Shown here: positions 16,429 to 48,044 of the stretch, piece by piece
How the letters are laid out: every line of letters starts with the position of its first letter
How positions within the stretch are numbered: position 1 is the stretch's first letter
Assembly: GCF_021869535.1 (NCBI RefSeq)
Contig: NW_026262604.1
Location: 63,364,001 to 63,428,000 of the forward strand
Source: Mytilus californianus
Taxonomy: Eukaryota
Direction of reading: 5' to 3'
DNA length: 64,000 nt
Program-made: the position numbers and the translations under genes
Notes under the pieces: model-generated
The model's input: only the letters and a program-made list of their open reading frames with translations
What the model was told of the DNA's origin: nothing
The model's database searches: none

Positions 16429-17214
16429 TTTTGTAATTAGTTCGTATAACAAAATATTTCACACAGCAAATTGATTAGTTGATATCGATAACAAGAGGAA
16501 AACATATGCATATAAACATAAGATAATATAGTCTGTCTATAAAAATCCTATGTTAAAAGTTTTAACCATGAATAACCCAGCTTTTTATTTCCATTTTTCA
16601 CAATTTTTCCCTACAAATCACATTTTACACAAGAATTACAATTTTTCAAATACTAACTACTATAGGACTCCTTAAGATAAACATCAGATAGTATTTTCTA
16701 TTTTCTATTTTGATCCCAATTCGAAAGTTCTAACAATCAATAACCGAGATTTTTTTATTTCCAGTTATTGGGATTTTCTGTCTTAAAACAAACATATATT
16801 CAACCAAAATTACCCAAATATTAATATTGATAACTAAAGGACTTCACAAAATAAACATAAAATAGTATATTCTTTTTAATATATAGATCAAATTTCAAAA
16901 ATATTAACCATTAACAATGGACATTCTCTACGTTTCCTGTTTTCGATGTTTTTTTCACTAAAAATCACTCATTTCACCTCAAAATTACCTCAATATGAAA
17001 AATAATAACTAGAGGACTACATAATATACTATTAAGATAAGGTTTCCTATCTTCAACAAGCTTTAGGTATAAAAATGTAACCATAAATAACAATTTTTCT
17101 TCTTTTCAAGTTTTCAGCATTTTTTCTCTAAAAACCACATATTTTACCCAAAAAAAACCTTGTGTTGCAATTAGTTGGAGGTTGAGTGATTTTAGAGCTA
17201 AATTGACTAGGCTA

Positions 17215-18252
17215 ATATTACTGGTAAATTATTAAGGCAGGGATTTCATTACTACAAATTACTTAAAACCTTTACTAAATTCTTCCATAGAGATAAAGAT
17301 TTGGTTTTGAAGTTTGGTTGTACCTGTAGAAAACTTATTTCAAACAAGATAGCACATCCTCATTGTTACGGAGATGTTGTTTACCGAGCCAGGAAATTTG
17401 GAAACGATCCGGGTAAACTTATCGATCCTTTAAATAAACTTATTCTAAAAGGTTACTAATTCAACACTGTAATTAGATCTTTGAATATTGTTTTTATTGG
17501 TATTAATGTTGATTTTCTTATCAGTAAATTAAAATCAAACTAAATATTATTTTTATATATATATATGCACATTCATGGCTCTACAATCTGTCGATACCTG
17601 TATCTTGGCATTGCACAAGGTCATGTTTTTCTCTGACTGTTTACGACATCTTTACACTAAATCCAATAGATGTTGGATGTGTACTGATTGATATTTTAGT
17701 CTTAGTTGCATGATTTTTTTCATTAGTTGTTATTGGCTTTGAACAAGCTATCAGTAACTGCGAGTACTCTCAGATCTGTACTTAGTGTCTTTCTGTTGTG
17801 TGGGAGTACAAGTACCCGTCCTCGTTCACTCTGTGTTTTTGTTAGATGTATTTCTATTTGTATCCATCTGATGAGTTAAGCCTTTTTCAACTGTTTTTAT
17901 AGTTTGTTCTTATGTTGTACCGTTACACGACTGTCCCAGGTTAGGGGGAGGGTTTTGCGCCAACAAACTGGTTTAACCCCGCCACATTCTGTAGGAGCCT
18001 GTAGTTCAGTGGTTGTCGTTTGTTGCTGTGTAACATATTTGTTTTTCGTTCATTATTTTGTACATAAATTAGGCCGTTAGTTTTCTCGTTTGAATTGTTT
18101 TACATTTGTCATTTCGGGGCCTATTATAGCTGACTATGTGGTATGGGCTTTGCTCATTGTTGAAGGTCGTACGGTGACCTATAGTTGTTAATTTCTGTGT
18201 CATTTGGTCTCTTGTGGGGAGTTGTCTCATTGGCAATCATACCACATCTTCT
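17215..18252 (+). mobile_element. 5'-truncated Naiad-type Penelope-like element (family 2): RT C-terminus plus 3' UTR
   Basis: Translates to QGFHYYKLLKTFTKF...HPHCYGDVVYRARK...GINVDFL, homologous to the RT end at 45080-45390. A long UTR follows, ending CATACCACATCTTCTT. Confidence 0.8.
17635..17701 (+). ncRNA. SECIS-like stem-loop (type II) with a degenerate core (ACGA instead of AUGA)
   Basis: Helix I GACTG/TAGTC; core A-CGAC (17643-47) / TGAT (17689-92); helix II ATCTTTACAC/GTGTACTGAT (8 of 10 paired); AAA 11 nt after the core; apical ministem TCCAA/TTGGA. Confidence 0.65.
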
Positions 18253-19386
18253 TACTATACGACCCCAAAAAAAATTGCGGTCGTATATTAGTATCACGTC
18301 GTCGTCGTCAGTGTCGTCCGAAGACAGTTGGTTTCCGGACAATAACTTTAGTATAATTAAATAGAAATCTATGAAATTTAAACACAAGGTTTATAACCAC
18401 AAAAGGAAGGTTGGGATTGATTTTGGGGGTTATGGTCTTAACATTTTAGGAATTAGGGGCCAAAAAGGGGCCCAAATAAGCATTTTTCTAGTTTCCAGAC
18501 AATAATTTGTGGAACGGTGTATGAATCTCTCTGAAATTATACCACAAAGGGATGGTTAGGATTTGCTTTGGGGGGGAGGGGGTTATGGCTCAAACCGTTA
18601 GGAATTAGGGGCAAAAAAGGGGAAAAACAAGGGTTTCCTGGTTAATGGACAATTACTTAAGAAAATTTAAAAGCAGTGTAAGGGAGGTAATCCAAACACA
18701 ACGTTTCGATTACCTCCCTTACACTGCTTTTAAATTATGTATAAAGAAATGTTGTATTGTCTTGAGATGATTTGCTGTCAATTTATTTTTAGATCGAAGT
18801 TACTATTAAGGAATATTAATTTTAGCCATGATTATGTATGTCATTTTCTATTTTAAGACTTTTATGATGTATTTAAATGGGTAATTATGGTTGCAAACTC
18901 CATTGGAAATTTGAATTAAGTTTATGTCCATATCTTGAGGGAAAGAATTTTTTGGGGGAAAAGGGGGGGGGGGGGGTGAAAAAAGAAATTGTGGGGGGTC
19001 AATTTTTTTCTCATTTCAGATTTCAGAAATTAAAAAGAAAAATTCTTCAAATATTATTTTTTTTGCAAAAAAAAGGGGGGGGGGGGTCAATACGCAACAG
19101 CATAGTGTATTGCACAAAAGCAAAAAAAAAGGGGGGGGGGTCAATTCGCAACAGCAAAGTGTATTGCACAAAAGCAAAAAATTGAACATAAATTCAAATC
19201 ATATAACGAACTCTAAGTTCTTTGACTACAGTTATTCTGTGTCAGAAACCTATTATGTGTCAAATATTTAATTACAATCCAAATTCAGACCTGTATCTTA
19301 AGCGCGAATATTGTGTCCATTTTTGCCCCAACTGTTCAGGGTTGGACCTCTGCGGTCGTATCCAGCTGCTCTCGGCGAAGCAATTT
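18252..19386 (+). mobile_element. Complete non-autonomous Helentron/HINE-like element
   Basis: 5' hairpin TATACGACC...GGTCGTATA, a (GTC)n tract, 3' subterminal inverted TGCGGTCGTAT (19351-61), a terminal hairpin and a T-run. Same 3' end as the element ending at 1318. Confidence 0.75.
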
Positions 19387-41984: not shown

Positions 41985-42229
41985 ATTGCTGTAACAATAG
42001 TAAAGATATGTACACACAGTATGTGCACCTTTGTTGAAAGTTCTTATCTGTAGGAAACTGATGAAAGACCGAGGCATCAAAAATGTTCACAAAATAGCTT
42101 TTATGTTCTTATAATATACAAGATAATGGAGTATGTGTCCGAGCGAGAACTTCTCTATGTTCATTACTTAAGGAATATTTATCTTAAACTCATATTTCAC
42201 TATTCAGCCCCATTCTACTATTTAGTCAG

Positions 42230-45200
42230 ACGTCAGGCGCTACCCTGATATACCCTGTCTTTTGTTTTTGTCCTCTGGTTTTGTAGTTTACGTTTTTTTG
42301 TCGGGTACTTGATGACGGATAGCGTTTGACGTCTTTAGCCGAACAGTTTTATCTTTTTACTTTATTCAATTCCTGTGTGCTGGTTCATACTCTGGACGCC
42401 AGTCTTTGCTTATTTCAATTGGAAATACGGATAACAAAAAACAAAAAAAGAAACTCAGAAATGGACAAATACTAAATACCAAACTCGTTCAAAGGGTATC
42501 TACACGTCTCAATCTTCAAAATCGCTTATTTAAGAATACTACAATCGCTAACATTTTCAATAATAAAAATCTTGGTAACCCGTCTATCGATAAGTGTAAT
42601 GACTTACATGTCTCCGTCTTTCCACCAACAATACCGTTAGGTCCACGTTAAATGGTCGCACATTTTCCTTCAATTTTGAAACTAATATAAATTGAAAAAC
42701 TAACAGCATTATCTATTTACTCACATAAAACAAACCGGGATGCGGTATTCAGTACGTAGGTGAAACTGGACGCTATTTATCTAAACGCACGCAAGAACAC
42801 CTTTATCGTTTTAAAAGACCCCATAAATTCAAAAGTATCATTTATCAACACCTTTAGAAGCACAATCATACTATTAAATATTTAACAGTTCAACCTTTAG
42901 AAGTAGCAGTCTGGGGAATCTCATTCAAAGTTTGTACGATCACGGAAAATAATTGAATTAAATTGGATTAAAAACTTACAGGCAGTCTATCCTCTCGGTC
43001 TTAATGATAATATCATGGGAATTGGTAATATATCTAGAACCGATTCTGTTAACATTTTGGATATAGTTTCTTAAACCAACAACCAAAATATTTCGGACCT
43101 AATTACTATTTCAAAAAACAACGACAGACATTACTGTTAACCAAGCTCTGTTCTTTACATGTTAATAAATTACATCAAATTTTAGAGGATTGCAACACAA
43201 TTCCATACTGCAGTCCTAAGTATGAAATCGTCCAAATTATAATTGCATATTGTTATTCTAAACTTTTTCCCAAAATTGATCGCCTTGAAGATCATTAAAA
43301 AACATTTTATTAAAATCAAATATGTCAATAAAGGTTTTGATTTTGTAAATATTGCGGTATTCTAAATGATCATTCCGTAAAAGAACAAATTCCTGGTTTA
43401 TTTATAATACTGAGCTCCCTCTTATTTGTTATGTTTACAAAAAATCTACCCGGAAATATGTGTTTAGTTATAGCGAAGTGTGTAAAGATGTTAATATCAG
43501 TGACAATACACATACGTCATGAAATTGCAGTAATTTCAAATTCATGTTTGTCCTCAGTTCCCATGTTATAACAGGAGACCTTAGAACGTCCATGACCGAG
43601 AGTTGACATCATTCCTCAGTAAAGGACCTAAATATAACCCCCCGTCAATTATTAATTGGAATGAGTGTCGTAACATCATCCACGACTCACTTCGTACTTA
43701 CTGCTCGAAATGGATAAAACGAGAAAAAGCTGACAAAAAAACCTTAGATTCTTTTTTTAATTCAGTAATGAACAAAGTGGATATTCGTATTAAACATTTT
43801 AAAGAACATTTTACTCCTTACAACAACCATAATAGCCCTATCTCTCGTATCAAACATAAGCTAAAAGAACTCGCCAAGGAATCTGTTTTTGTCACGGCTG
43901 ATAAGGCTGCTAATAATATCATTATTGTTTGACGTAAATTTTACACTGAGGTTCTGTAAAAGGAAATCACGAATTCACCAACATTCCAACTGACTCCATT
44001 TTCGAAAAATGACATCTGTAACAAACATAAAGTTTTAGCTACCTCTTTACAAGCAGAACCAAATACAATGAAAGTTCCAACTATGTACTAGCTTCCGAAG
44101 CTGCACAAAACACCTTACAAATATAGATTTATTTCGTTTTCAAGCCATTGTTCCACTACTAAACTGTCTATTCTACTTACTAGTACACTTGGTACATTCA
44201 AAAACTTTGTAATAAATTGTTCAAATAAGGCCTTTGAAAATAGTGGAATTGATTACTTTTGGAGTGTCAAAAATTCGTTGGAAGTACTTGATAAATTGCA
44301 TGCTTATATTGGTGATTTCGTATCTGTTCAAAGTTTAGATTTTTCTACCCTATATACCACTTTGCCTCATAATCTTATTAAGAAAAAATTCACACACCTA
44401 ATTAAATGGGCATTTAAAAAGTCAGAATGTGAATATATATGTTTTAACTCTTTTAGGTCATTTGTTAGTAACAACAGACACAAGAACTATGTCAATTGGA
44501 CCTGCTTTGTTACGATAACTGCCCTTGAATTGTTACTAGATAACATTTTTGTTCGCTATGGAGATTCCATATATCGTCAAGTTATCGGAACTCCAATGGC
44601 GACTAACTGTGCACCACTTTTTGCAGACCTGTTTCTGTATTGTTATGAGTTACAATTGATGACTAAAATTAGCAAAGACCCATCGAAACAACATCTGATA
44701 CAAAAATTTAATAACACGTTTAGATATTTTGATGATATATTGGCTCTCAATAATGACGACTTCAGTATGTACACTAAAGATATTTATCCTGCTGAACTGA
44801 CTTTAAATAAAGCTAAGACTAAAATTAACACTGCCTTTTCCTGGATCTTGATATCTATATCGTTAACGGGAAGCTAAATACAAATGTAACACAATTTATG
44901 ATAAAAGAGATGATTTTTCAGTTCCTATTGTTAGTTATCCATTTTTAGATGGTGACGTTCCATTGTCACCATCTTATGGTGTTTATATATCTCAACTTGT
45001 TCGATTCGCTCGTGTATGTAACAACGTATTTTATTTTAACGAAAGAAACCTCTGTATTACTGAAAAAGTATTACACCAGGGTTTTCGATATCACAAGCTA
45101 GTCAAAACATTTACTAAATTTTATCATCGGTACAAGGACATCATTCGTAAATATAAATCAACATGCAGACATCTTATACGTTCAGGTATTTCACATCCAA

Positions 45201-46013
45201 TCTTTTATGGTAATTTTCTATACAATGCACAAAAATGTCGACATTCACCTCAAAAGATAACCAAACCTTTAAACAGCCTTATTCAGAAGGGATATAGTTA
45301 CGATACTGTTGTCAGGTGATTAAAGATGGCATATTTTGGTATTATTATTGATTCACTCATATGGACTTTGCATCGGAAATTAACACATTTATTCTAAAAC
45401 CAGTTGTTGGCATGATATGGGTTATGTTCTTTTCATATATTTTATGATGGTATGATACTAAACCCCCTAATGGGAGGGATTGTACTTGATTTTCATATGA
45501 TGAAGACATAATCTTTCAATCAGTTTAACTGAGGTCTGGAGCTGGCATGTCAGTAAATGCTAGTAGTCCTTTGTTCATTTATGTATCATTGTCATTTTTC
45601 CGAGTTTCTTTTGTTACCTATTCTGACATCGGACTCGGACTTCTTTTAAACTGAGTTTTACTGTGCGTATTGCTGTGTGTTTGTTTATTCTACATTAGCT
45701 AGATGTATATAGGGAGGGTTGATATCTCACAAAACATGTCTAACCCCGCCGCATTTTTGGGCCTGTCCCAAGTCAGGAGCCTCTAGCCTTTTTTAGTCTT
45801 GTATGTTTTTTAATTTAAGTTCATTTATATGTTTTAGAGTTTAGTGTGACGTCCATTTTTCATTGAATTAGTACACATCTTTGTTTAGGGGCCAGTTGAA
45901 GCCCGCCCCCGGATGCGGGATGTTTCCACTGTGTTGAAGATCCATTGGTGGCCTATGGCTGTTTTCTGCTTTTTGGTCGGGTTGTTTTCTCTTTGACACA
46001 TTCCCCATTTCCA
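42230..46013 (+). mobile_element. Near-full-length Naiad-type Penelope-like retroelement (GIY-YIG endonuclease - CxC linker - RT), decayed; 5' boundary approximate
   Basis: From 42600: IIYLLT*NKPGCGIQYVGETGR..KRTQEH and ELNWIKNLQAVYPLGLN (GIY-YIG); S*NCS...HVITGDL (CxC linker); KGPKY; ADKAANN; PKLHK; DFSTLYTTLPH; GTPMATNCAPLFADLFL; FRYFDD; YDKRDDF; SYGVYISQL. The endonuclease precedes the RT. Confidence 0.9.
45422..45511 (+). ncRNA. Canonical type II SECIS element in the retroelement 3' UTR
   Basis: Long helix I (TTATGT/ACATAA, TCATAT/ATATGA); core A-TGAT (45444-48) / TGAT (45487-90); helix II GGTATGATAC/GGATTGTACT (9 of 10 paired including G-U); AAA at 45460-62, 11 nt after the core; ministem CCCCC-TAAT-GGGAG. 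Confidence 0.85.
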
Positions 46014-48044
46014 GCTATTAAAAGATTACGTTACAAGGTAATTTAAACAAATGACACCATCAATTGTCTCCATCAGCTGCTTACATCCACGTCATTTGGA
46101 CTGCGATGGATAGTTGTCTCATAACCAATCATACCATATCTCCTTATTTTTATAATCATAAAGGAGTTACTGTCTTTCCCAATGTTTAGATAACAGTTTT
46201 AGACCTATTTAAGCTTGTTTTACTATAATAAATATAGGAAGATGTGGTATAAGTGCCAATGAGACAACTCTCTATCCAAGTTACAATTTATAAAAGTAAA
46301 CCATTATAGGTCAAGGTACGGCCTTCAACACGGATAAGAATTTTAAAAACTGAAATTGATAGACAAAAAATAAAAACAGCAATAAATGATCAACAATTCA
46401 AAATCTACAAAAATACCAATATGACTGAAGCAATTAATTGTCTCCATGTGTATGTTATTGTCCAATGTGAAAAAATAAAACAAAAGAACAGCTTTATTTA
46501 TGTTTTCATTATGTAATCGTTCATTGTGAAAGAAACCAACTTTTACAATATATCATATTGTCCATGATTACAAAACCAACTGCCCATAGACACAAAGCAA
46601 AAAAAAAATCGACTGACAGTTTGCACTACTCTTGATAACAGCCACCGTATTTTACTGTTTTGGCATTTTTTTATACAAAGCTATCAAATAAGTGCAATTT
46701 ATCATTTTATTAGTTTTATTTACAACAGAAGAATATGACATCATTTAAGGCTGTGTCATCCCCTGAACTGCCTTGTTGTCCCTCTACCCTTGTCTGTAAG
46801 CCACAGATTGCAGTCCTACGAGGACAAGTACTCCAGCCACTAAAGTGTCCCCAGAAACCACTTCCGCCAATTTCATATCCAGGCCAATACCAATTTAAAG
46901 CTTTACACCTGAATTTTACGTAGTTGGCTGCGGTGTCATCTCCTCTTCCCTAAAATATAATTTGTTTCTTGTTAAAATAATTGATCGTTGAAAAGGTCTT
47001 ATAATTCAGATAAAGAAGGATAACATTTCATAATTCACATAATTAAAAATAAGATAATTTTGTTTAGAATGATTATCATAATCCATCAAATAAACAATTC
47101 ATTTTTATTCATAATACTCACCATTGTGTTTAAGTAGAGAAACTGACGGTGTATACTATCAAGAATGTCCACTCAAAAGCAGACTATTTTTCATACATGT
47201 ATAAAACCATGAAATAAAAATGTCGGCCTTCAATTTATGGTTAGAAAACTAGTAAATATGGCGATCACGTGGTTTCCATTGTTGCTTTTAAAACTGAGGT
47301 CTAGCCGGGTCGGTTTTCAACTGTATATTAATTAGTGTGTTCGTCCGTATTGTATTCGTAACAATACTAAATCCTTGTTTTCGTAACATCTATACCAAAG
47401 CGTGTATTTTCTTGACAATTAAAAACAAATATTCGGTCTCAATTGGCATTGTGTACCCTCCTGCTTTTATTTTTTTTCTGATTAATATTTGAGGTTTCCA
47501 AATCTACAAACATGACAAATAGGCGTAGGCATTTTGTATCTCCAACTCCCCCTAAAGAAATTGAGTCGATTGTGATACAGGATTCAAAGATTAATCATAA
47601 CATAACCATAACGCAATTATGTATCAATTATAATTTATTTTCTGAACCGTTGTTTTTTGTTTGAGAATAACATGGACATAGCCATGTTTGCCTTTATGTT
47701 TAATGAGGGTATCTATTTGAATTGTATCAGTATAAACTTAAATGGCCATGGATTTTCAGATATGGGGATGGGAATATGAGTTTTACGTAGCCCAAGCTTA
47801 AAACACAATACAGTTATTTCCTAATTAGATTTCATATTTAAAGACAGATTGGAAGAGTTTTGAAAATAAACCGGGGTGGTATCAAACAGACTCCTTCGAA
47901 AGTAACCAAACTCATTATGACGGGCTTGGGCAGATGTCAAATTACGTTAATAACTTAACACTGCAGTAATGAACCAGTTGTGACAAAAAGGGAATGAAAA
48001 AGCTTTAAAATATGTTGAATGCAAATAAATTGTAATCTAATAAA

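What the first reader, a model, noticed from the sequence alone, without database searches (positions are those of the whole stretch)
42230..46013. Selenoprotein-coding Penelope-like retroelement: TGA at conserved Cys positions plus a canonical SECIS
Seen in sequence: the endonuclease precedes the RT. In-frame TGA falls at 42600-02 (*LTC, where a C-x2-C pair is expected), 42693-95 (N*KTNSIIY), 43520-22 (first position of the CxC linker, *NC) and 43930-32 (ADKAANNIIIV*RK). The first Cys of the GIY-YIG CCHH finger is TAA (42726-28), one transition from TGA but two changes from TGT/TGC. A type II SECIS folds at 45422-45511, just after the ORF end. Established: Naiad-clade PLEs have this permuted EN-CxC-RT order, and Sec-encoding Naiads have been reported from spiders and clams; the Cys expectation at these sites is from my recollection of the family. 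Inference: the ancestral active copy made a multi-Sec protein. If the host is a mytilid mussel, this may extend the known range or be an independent origin. Caveats: this copy is dead (TAG 42855, TAA 43957, TAG 44089, frameshifts), the first TGA sits at a frameshift junction, and one TGA (45317) is not at a Cys site.
Basis: partly seen in the sequence, partly recalled or inferred. Interest (0 to 1): 0.92.

Follow-up and report, generated by a model that had tools for sequence, protein, structure and literature searches.

The report
Dead copy of selenocysteine-coding Naiad retrotransposon
This is a broken copy of a very abundant mollusc retrotransposon whose intact sister copies must read four (in one branch five) UGA "stop" codons as selenocysteine, a trick published in 2021 for clam and spider relatives, here seen in a new host with new selenocysteine positions.

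Summary
Window 42100-46013 (+) is one decayed copy of a high-copy Naiad-type Penelope-like element, with the endonuclease before the reverse transcriptase.

- **Intact siblings:** twelve sibling copies keep a 1002-codon frame whose only in-frame stops are four TGA.
- **Cysteine columns:** those TGA sit at four of the nine columns that are at least 90% Cys in 44 full-length homologs.
- **Genome-wide fixity:** at the DKA+8 site the genome holds 1432 TGA words against 2 TGY words.
- **Selection:** dN/dS between two intact subfamilies is 0.10-0.14 downstream of the TGAs.
- **SECIS:** a SECIS_1-like hairpin lies about 50 nt after the TAA stop. It scores 32.5 bits, just under Rfam's cut-off of 35. 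It recurs with compensatory pair changes in two other families.
- **Host machinery:** the host has two tRNA-Sec genes.
- **Fifth TGA:** the TGA at the CxC motif (43520) is not family-wide. It marks an older branch of at least 255 copies, and it recurs in two other families.
- **Copy-specific lesions:** TAA 42726, TAG 42855, TAA 43957, TAG 44089 and TGA 45317.

The kind is known (Craig et al. 2021). Three sites match the published clam pattern, so an independent origin is not supported. The new points are the host, the finger and CxC sites, and five Sec codons. This scan had already noted such elements elsewhere in this genome.

The parts
42100..46013 (+). Whole element: one full-length but decayed copy of the Naiad family
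   Evidence: Both limits are shared with 29 sibling copies in the same genome. Identity to siblings is 86-93%.
42100..42447 (+). 5' leader upstream of the family's start codon
   Evidence: The sibling ATG maps to window 42448-50, which reads AAG here.
42448..45383 (+). Remnant of the single 1002-codon ORF (endonuclease, CxC linker, reverse transcriptase), broken by stops and frameshifts
   Evidence: Mapped from an intact sibling used only as a ruler. Twelve siblings keep the frame open apart from 4 TGA.
42585..42611 (+). C-x4-U-x2-C zinc-finger-like motif (CX2-5CxxC type). TGA 42600-02 is its second Cys position. A 10-bp deletion lies just upstream in this copy.
   Evidence: Siblings have TGA in 18/18 copies. 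Homologs have Cys in 31/31. The deletion is seen.
42693..42695 (+). TGA at the Cys that precedes the GIY-YIG motif
   Evidence: Siblings have TGA in 18/18 copies. Homologs have Cys in 37/37. This is a published Sec site of all Sec-Naiads.
42708..43075 (+). GIY-YIG endonuclease core (IIY ... YVGET ... R..EH ... E ... N) with the CCHH finger
   Evidence: It aligns colinearly with homologs whose N-terminal part matches Pfam PF01541 above the cut-off.
42726..42728 (+). TAA in this copy at the first Cys of the CCHH finger. The family state is TGA.
   Evidence: 17 of 18 siblings have TGA. Homologs have Cys in 37/37. This is the published clam Sec site.
43520..43528 (+). CxC linker motif. The first position is TGA in this copy and its sub-lineage, and TGT in the younger sub-lineages.
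   Evidence: TGA in 4 and TGT in 26 of 30 copies. Genome-wide there are 255 exact TGA words against 418 TGT words. Homologs have Cys in 44/44.
43930..43932 (+). TGA at the Cys 8 residues after the DKA motif (start of the RT part)
   Evidence: Siblings have TGA in 30/30 copies. Genome-wide the count is 1432 TGA against 2 TGY. Homologs have Cys in 44/44. This is a published Sec site of all Sec-Naiads.
43933..45380 (+). Reverse-transcriptase part (FDFSTLY..., ...GTNCAPL..., F/YxDD motifs)
   Evidence: It aligns colinearly with homologs whose C-terminal part matches Pfam PF00078. dN/dS is 0.10 between intact subfamilies.
45317..45319 (+). Copy-specific TGA, not a Sec site
   Evidence: TCA in 28 of 29 siblings.
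45381..45383 (+). TAA that corresponds to the family's true stop codon
   Evidence: Siblings end ...HRN-TAA. Mapped to the window and by reading.
45434..45499 (+). SECIS-like hairpin with AUGA, unpaired AAA, a 3-bp mini-stem and UGAU. The lower stem extends to about 45419-45514.
   Evidence: Rfam SECIS_1 scores 32.5 bits, E 2e-4. Nine of 11 sibling loci match at the same place at 29.9-31.7 bits. ATGA is kept in 39/39 copies, AAA in 36/39 and GA in 36/39. Across three families 6 pairs change on both sides and stay paired.
45500..46013 (+). 3' tail of the element after the SECIS
   Evidence: Shared by siblings up to 46013. Very high depth in RNA libraries.

Best explanation
**What it is.** Window 42100-46013 is a dead insertion of a Naiad-clade Penelope-like retrotransposon of a mollusc. 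The family's single mRNA encodes a 1002-residue protein: an N-terminal GIY-YIG endonuclease with two zinc-finger-like motifs, a CxC linker and a C-terminal reverse transcriptase.

**Where the UGA codons are.** Four of the nine near-invariant cysteine positions are written as UGA:
- the second Cys of the C-x4-C-x2-C finger;
- the Cys before GIY-YIG;
- the first Cys of the CCHH finger;
- the Cys 8 residues after DKA.

In an older branch, to which this copy belongs, a fifth UGA replaces the first Cys of the CxC motif.

**How it most likely works (inferred).** A SECIS hairpin about 50 nt after the UAA stop recruits the host's SECIS-binding protein, Sec-specific elongation factor and tRNA-Sec. The ribosome then inserts selenocysteine at each UGA and goes on to make the reverse transcriptase.

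**What is shown.** The fixity of TGA, the open frames, purifying selection after the TGAs, the Cys columns, the SECIS-like hairpin and the host tRNA-Sec genes.

**What is inferred.** That the residue inserted is selenocysteine, and that the hairpin is what drives it.
For: 1. **Open frames.** Twelve full-length siblings have a frame of 1002 codons from the first ATG to TAA. It holds exactly four in-frame TGA at identical positions and no TAA or TAG.
2. **Fixity.** TGA is found in 18/18, 18/18, 17/18 and 30/30 sampled copies. At DKA+8 there are 1432 exact TGA words against 2 TGY words in the whole genome.
3. **Cys columns.** In 44 full-length homologs the four columns are Cys in every row that covers them. 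Only 9 of 1002 columns are that Cys-rich.
4. **Selection.** dN/dS between two intact subfamilies is 0.12 overall. It is 0.14 for aa 98-521 and 0.10 for aa 523-1002, both downstream of UGA codons.
5. **Recent activity.** Some copies differ by 0-3 bases in 3 kb.
6. **SECIS.** SECIS_1 was the only Rfam family matched in the 900 nt searched after the ORF. It recurs at the same place in 9 of 11 siblings. AUGA, AAA and GA are conserved. Two other Sec-type families have their own SECIS_1 hit after the ORF, and six helix pairs differ on both sides yet stay paired.
7. **Other families.** Five further families in public data have TGA at the same Cys columns.
8. **Host.** Two tRNA-Sec genes with anticodon TCA score 79.6 and 77 bits.
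9. **RNA.** Reads from four RNA libraries cover the whole element, and no other letter is listed at the TGA positions.
10. **Literature.** The pattern matches the published description of Sec-Naiads (PMC8557442).
Against: - No protein-level evidence was available: no selenium labelling and no mass spectrometry.
- Every SECIS_1 hit is below Rfam's gathering score: 32.5 bits in the window, 26.5-31.7 elsewhere, against a cut-off of 35. A scan of the whole window at the gathering threshold returns nothing.
- Within the family the hairpin shows only one-sided pair changes.
- RNA reads lie in both orientations and pile up at the 3' end, so a full-length sense transcript is not shown.
- Pfam does not recognise EN or RT in this family's own pieces. 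It does so only in homologs.
Confidence: 0.87

Rival explanations
1. The UGA codons are read through, but not as selenocysteine. A near-cognate tRNA (Cys, Trp or Arg) or some other programmed readthrough decodes them, and the SECIS-like hairpin is incidental or has another role.
For: All SECIS_1 scores are below the curated cut-off. No protein evidence exists. Selection after the UGAs shows only that translation continues, not which residue is inserted.
Against: - All UGAs sit at invariant Cys columns. That is the signature of Cys/Sec exchange.
- A hairpin with AUGA, AA and GA sits after the ORF in three families that differ in sequence, with compensatory changes.
- The host has tRNA-Sec.
- The same arrangement was graded as top-confidence SECIS in clam and spider Naiads.
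Confidence: 0.07
2. The TGAs are plain stop codons. The family is non-autonomous or dead and is copied in trans by Cys-type Naiads, so the conserved TGAs reflect descent from one mutated master copy.
For: Copies of a retrotransposon inherit whatever their master carried, so fixity alone does not prove function. Cys-type Naiads are reported from mussels.
Against: - dN/dS of 0.10-0.14 in the 900 codons after the first TGA, between subfamilies about 4% apart, shows selection on the whole protein.
- No TAA or TAG occurs in 1002 codons in 12 copies.
- Six families 41-59% identical keep TGA at the same columns with open frames of 979-1079 codons.
- Four chance nonsense mutations all landing in Cys columns has P about 3e-9.
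Confidence: 0.03
3. This rival concerns the fifth site only. The TGA at the CxC motif (43520) was a disabling mutation in one master copy, and its roughly 255 or more descendants were made in trans by four-Sec siblings. On this view the branch never made a five-Sec protein.
For: All sampled copies of this branch are old (mean pairwise identity 92.4%) and broken or 5'-truncated. The young, intact copies all carry TGT.
Against: - A separate family has an open 1003-codon frame with TGA at this same column plus the other four (L056).
- A third family has it too (L060).
- Twenty public protein fragments end just before this column.
- An mRNA that already recodes three upstream UGAs and one downstream UGA should recode this one as well (inference).
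Confidence: 0.25

Closest known systems
[quoted passage not shown] 2021, PMC8557442)
   Same: - The EN-CxC-RT order is the same.
- UGA sits at the Cys before GIY-YIG, at the first Cys of CCHH and at the Cys 8 residues after DKA.
- A SECIS follows the ORF.
- Copy number in bivalves is high.
   Different: - This family adds UGA at the second Cys of the CX2-5CxxC finger. One branch adds UGA at the first Cys of CxC, a site the paper does not list.
- That gives four or five Sec codons against the paper's three or four.
- The hairpin folds as form 2 (with a mini-stem), whereas the paper reports type I.
- The SECIS starts about 50 nt after the stop, against 1-21 nt or overlapping in the paper.
- The host is not one of the paper's four species.
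- No direct sequence comparison with the published consensus sequences was possible, because the paper's supplements are not held.
Naiad_Sdum and Naiad_Smim, selenoprotein-coding Naiads of Stegodyphus spiders (same paper)
   Same: UGA sits at the pre-GIY-YIG and DKA+8 cysteines. In Naiad_Sdum it also sits at the second Cys of the CX2-5CxxC finger.
   Different: The spiders use the first finger Cys and not the CCHH Cys. The paper infers a separate origin from the clam families. This family follows the clam pattern.
Cys-type Naiads, including the mussel and oyster families of the same paper
   Same: Domain order, finger motifs, CxC linker and DKA motif are shared, and no canonical hammerhead ribozyme is present. 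Identity over ORF aa 98-521 is 25-36%.
   Different: They have Cys where this family has UGA, C-x2-C rather than U-x4-C at the start of CCHH, and no need for a SECIS.
Selenoprotein P
   Same: One mRNA has several UGA-Sec codons served by a 3'-UTR SECIS, and it is especially Sec-rich in bivalves (cited).
   Different: It is a host selenium-transport protein with two SECIS elements and a Sec-rich tail. It is unrelated in sequence and function. Here the Sec positions are putative zinc-ligand cysteines of a transposon enzyme.

Membership tests
Naiad clade of Penelope-like elements | GIY-YIG endonuclease lies N-terminal to the reverse transcriptase in one ORF | tested here: met
   The ORF aligns colinearly with 44 homologs of 800-1279 aa. 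In the nine scanned, Pfam finds GIY-YIG at about residues 50-260 in all nine and RVT_1 at about 650-890 in five. This family's own pieces get no Pfam hit.
Naiad clade of Penelope-like elements | CCHH zinc-finger-like motif inside the endonuclease (absent in Chlamys) | tested here: met
   The motif reads U97-x4-C102 ... H. Both Cys columns are 37/37 Cys in homologs, and the first His column is visibly conserved. The second His was not examined.
Naiad clade of Penelope-like elements | CX2-5CxxC motif upstream of GIY-YIG | tested here: met
   The motif reads C50-x4-U55-x2-C58. The columns are 93-100% Cys in homologs.
Naiad clade of Penelope-like elements | CxC motif in the linker between EN and RT | tested here: met
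   Siblings read SCNCS and the window reads *NC. The columns are 44/44 and 43/44 Cys in homologs.
Naiad clade of Penelope-like elements | No canonical hammerhead ribozyme | tested here: met
   No Rfam hammerhead family matched in the window at the gathering threshold, nor at E up to 10 in 45200-46100. Only Rfam's models were tried.
Naiad clade of Penelope-like elements | Pseudo-LTR or tandem arrangement and frequent 5' truncation | tested here: met
   Siblings carry a partial copy (window 44844-46013 equivalent) directly upstream. A tandem set with 4020-bp spacing lies on contig C13. Most copies are 5'-truncated. The window copy itself is solitary.
Naiad clade of Penelope-like elements | Insertion-in-fingers domain in the RT | not tested
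   No structure was predicted and no TERT alignment made. The PDB sequence search gave nothing useful.
Eukaryotic selenoprotein gene | In-frame UGA at a position where homologs have Cys | tested here: met
   Four fixed sites and one sub-lineage site, all in columns that are 100% Cys in homologs.
Eukaryotic selenoprotein gene | SECIS element in the 3' UTR that passes a curated model | tested here: inconclusive
   SECIS_1 scores 32.5 bits against a gathering score of 35. Siblings score 29.9-31.7 and other families 26.5-28.4. The position, the AUGA/AA/GA motifs and cross-family compensatory pairs speak for it. SECISearch3 is not on hand.
Eukaryotic selenoprotein gene | Coding constraint continues downstream of the UGA | tested here: met
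   dN/dS is 0.14 for aa 98-521 and 0.10 for aa 523-1002.
Eukaryotic selenoprotein gene | Host has the Sec-decoding machinery | tested here: met
   Two tRNA-Sec genes score above Rfam's cut-off and carry anticodon TCA. The protein factors were not searched.
Eukaryotic selenoprotein gene | Selenocysteine present in the protein | not testable with these tools
   This needs 75Se labelling or mass spectrometry.

The most novel reading that the evidence does not exclude
Within one clade of bivalve-type Naiads, cysteine and selenocysteine have been swapped repeatedly at putative zinc-ligand positions.
- Families with three Sec, with four (adding the finger's second Cys) and with five (adding the first Cys of CxC) all exist.
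- The CxC site is UGA in three separate families and is Cys/Sec-dimorphic inside the window's own family.

On this reading, once a transposon mRNA carries a SECIS, TGT-to-TGA changes at Cys codons become tolerated. The element then drifts or adapts toward a five-Sec enzyme, one more than the three or four Sec codons reported for Naiads. Thousands of SECIS-bearing 3' ends are meanwhile scattered through the host genome.
Probability: 0.55. Interest if true: 0.6.

Novelty: new member of a known kind. Interest (0 to 1): 0.45.

Why it matters
Selenoprotein-coding transposons are known from only four families in one paper, which predicted that more lie hidden behind apparent stop codons in bivalves. 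This finding bears that out in several ways.

- **Scale.** The trait is carried by thousands of copies in this genome, some nearly identical to each other.
- **Breadth.** It belongs to a whole clade of families seen in several public assemblies.
- **New sites.** It extends to Sec positions the paper does not list, reaching five per protein.
- **A natural comparison.** The Cys/Sec dimorphism at one site inside a single family offers a test of what Sec does at a zinc-ligand position.
- **Annotation.** Gene callers cut these ORFs at the UGAs. Thirty public protein fragments end exactly there, so these elements are systematically mis-annotated.
- **SECIS supply.** The family spreads ready-made SECIS hairpins that could seed new host selenoprotein genes.

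Tried and rejected
- **Pfam.** This family's own ORF pieces gave no EN or RT hit. Domains had to be read from homologs.
- **PDB.** A sequence search with the RT piece gave only noise.
- **Rfam at gathering threshold.** The whole window plus two loci returned nothing.
- **Naming hosts.** Cluster look-ups carry no organism names. Run organisms are coded, apart from the label 'mollusc metagenome'. A paper search for assembly GCA_014845165.1 found nothing. The paper's supplements are not held. So 'mytilid' and 'clam' could not be attached to any sequence.
- **RNA reads.** They lie in both orientations with a strong 3' bias, so neither strand nor a full-length transcript can be claimed.
- **RNA editing of TGA.** No other letter is listed at the four sites, but depth there is low.
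- **Direction of the Cys/Sec change at CxC.** Midpoint rooting nests the TGT copies among the TGA copies. Rooting on another family makes the two lineages sisters. The question is unresolved.
No SECIS_1 match appeared there at E up to 5.
Full report
**What is in the window.** The sequence at 42100-46013 (+) is one insertion of a repeat. Both ends are shared with 29 sibling copies fetched from the same 1.65-Gb genome.

This copy is dead. Measured against an intact sibling used only as a ruler, it shows these lesions.
- The start codon is lost (AAG at 42448-50).
- There are deletions of 10 bp (before 42598), 8 bp (42904) and 60 bp (43076).
- There is an 8-bp insertion at 44882, plus six single-base indels.
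- In-frame stops are TAA 42726, TAG 42855, TAA 43072, TAA 43957, TAG 44089, TAA 44826 and TGA 45317.

**The family is alive, and its frame is open except for TGA.** Twelve full-length siblings have a frame of 1002 codons from ATG to TAA. It contains exactly four in-frame TGA, at codons 55, 86, 97 and 522, and no TAA or TAG. Some of these copies differ by 0-3 bases in 3 kb, which points to very recent copying.

Column counts over 30 copies:

| Window site | State in siblings |
|---|---|
| 42600 | TGA 18/18 |
| 42693 | TGA 18/18 |
| 42726 | TGA 17/18 (the window alone has TAA) |
| 43930 | TGA 30/30 |
| 42855, 43957, 44089 | sense codons in all siblings |
| 45317 | TCA in 28 of 29 |

Genome-wide, the 22-base word around the 43930 site occurs 1432 times with TGA and twice with TGY.

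**The TGA columns are cysteines.** A search of 1.84 billion proteins with ORF residues 98-521 gave 2513 hits. I aligned the 44 hits of 800 residues or more. The four columns are Cys in every row that covers them: 31/31, 37/37, 37/37 and 44/44. Only 9 of the 1002 columns are at least 90% Cys. Four random codons all landing in that set has P about 3e-9.

The four sites are:
- the second Cys of a C-x4-C-x2-C finger;
- the Cys before GIY-YIG;
- the first Cys of the CCHH finger;
- the Cys eight residues after DKA.

The homologs carry Pfam GIY-YIG near the N-terminus (all nine scanned) and RVT_1 near the C-terminus (five of nine). This confirms the permuted Naiad architecture.

**Translation continues past the TGAs.** Two intact subfamilies differ by about 4% at the DNA level. 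Between them dN/dS is 0.12 overall, 0.14 for residues 98-521 and 0.10 for residues 523-1002. The reverse transcriptase, which lies after all the UGAs, is under purifying selection.

**The SECIS.**
- *Score.* Rfam's SECIS_1 model matches 45434-45499 at 32.5 bits (E 2e-4 for the stretch searched), just under the curated 35 bits. A gathering-threshold scan of the window reports nothing.
- *Recurrence.* The match recurs in 9 of 11 sibling loci at 29.9-31.7 bits, starting about 52 nt after the TAA stop.
- *Motifs.* ATGA is kept in 39/39 copies, the unpaired AAA in 36/39 and the 3' GA in 36/39. Helix changes within the family are one-sided only.
- *Other families.* Two other Sec-type families have their own SECIS_1 hit after the ORF, at 26.5 and 28.4 bits. 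In a joint alignment, six helix pairs change on both sides and stay paired.
- *Host.* There are two tRNA-Sec genes with anticodon TCA.

**The fifth TGA.** TGA at 43520, the first Cys of CxC, is carried by only 4 of the first 30 copies; the rest have TGT. Genome-wide, the 18-base word occurs 255 times with TGA and 418 times with TGT in the matching context.

The TGA copies form an older, star-like burst with mean pairwise identity 92.4%, and the window copy belongs to it. The TGT copies are younger, at 97.8%. Rooted on another family, the two lineages are sisters, so the direction of change is open.

The same column is TGA in two other families. One of them has an open 1003-codon frame with five TGA, on a contig of NCBI assembly GCA_014845165.1. 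That family is also abundant in this genome at 88-94% identity.

**A clade of Sec-type families.**
- Public protein fragments related to this ORF end preferentially just before the CxC column (20 fragments) and just before the DKA+8 column (10 fragments). Gene callers stop at these TGA.
- I checked five further families at the DNA level. All have TGA at the pre-GIY-YIG and CCHH columns. All have TGA at DKA+8 wherever the contig reaches that far.
- All six families share U-x4-C where Cys-type Naiads have C-x2-C.
- In a tree of 69 homologs they group together.

**Comparison with what is known.** Craig et al. 2021 (PMC8557442) described exactly this phenomenon in two clams and two spiders. They found three or four UGA at conserved cysteines plus a SECIS. 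UGA fell at the pre-GIY-YIG and DKA+8 cysteines in all four families, and at the first CCHH Cys in the clams.

The family here has all three clam sites, so it is best read as part of the same bivalve lineage and not as a new origin. The paper treats mussel Naiads but does not report Sec coding in them. I found no later paper that does.

The new points are the host, the finger site in a bivalve-type family, the CxC site, and five Sec codons. The tools show only that the host is a mollusc.

**RNA.** Reads from four RNA libraries cover the whole element and list no other letter at the four TGA. They lie in both orientations and are strongly 3'-biased, so they do not prove a full-length sense transcript.

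**Earlier notes of this scan.** The scan had already flagged Sec-type Naiads many times elsewhere in this genome. One follow-up reached the same verdict on a different family.

**Limits kept.** Siblings served only as rulers and for column counts, and no copy is singled out.

1. The 43520 TGA marks a sub-lineage and is not family-wide.
2. An independent origin is not supported.
3. The SECIS falls just under the curated threshold.

This is a new member of a known kind. It is of moderate interest, mainly for the extra Sec sites and the Cys/Sec dimorphism.

Noticed in passing
An Rfam scan of 17000-18400 at E up to 5 gave no SECIS_1 match.
   Followed up: partly
G000:C154:27755505-27807263 (L055 holds the first unit): About 50 tandem tRNA-like units with a 728-bp period each score 42.8 bits against the tRNA-Sec model, below its cut-off of 47. 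Their identity is not established.
   Followed up: no
L002:1152-1227: A perfect 76-nt palindrome centred on a short (TA)n run abuts the 5' end of a sibling copy. It gives spurious miRNA-model hits on both strands. It may be an inverted 5' junction of the kind described for Penelope-like elements, or a microsatellite target.
   Followed up: no
L056:473-3700, and G000 places listed: A second Sec-type Naiad family shares 59% protein identity with the window's. It has five in-frame TGA in an open 1003-codon frame and its own SECIS-like hairpin. It is present in NCBI assembly GCA_014845165.1 and, at 88-94% identity, in many copies in this genome.
   Followed up: partly
window 45600-46013 (equivalent to L006:770-1165): The last 400 nt of the element have 10 to 100 times the RNA depth of the coding part in all four RNA libraries, with many reads running on into unlike sequence. 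Truncated 3' ends are probably embedded in many other transcripts.
   Followed up: no
G000:C13:18889476-18899272: At least three copies of the family stand head to tail with 4020-bp spacing. Two of them have identical ORFs.
   Followed up: no
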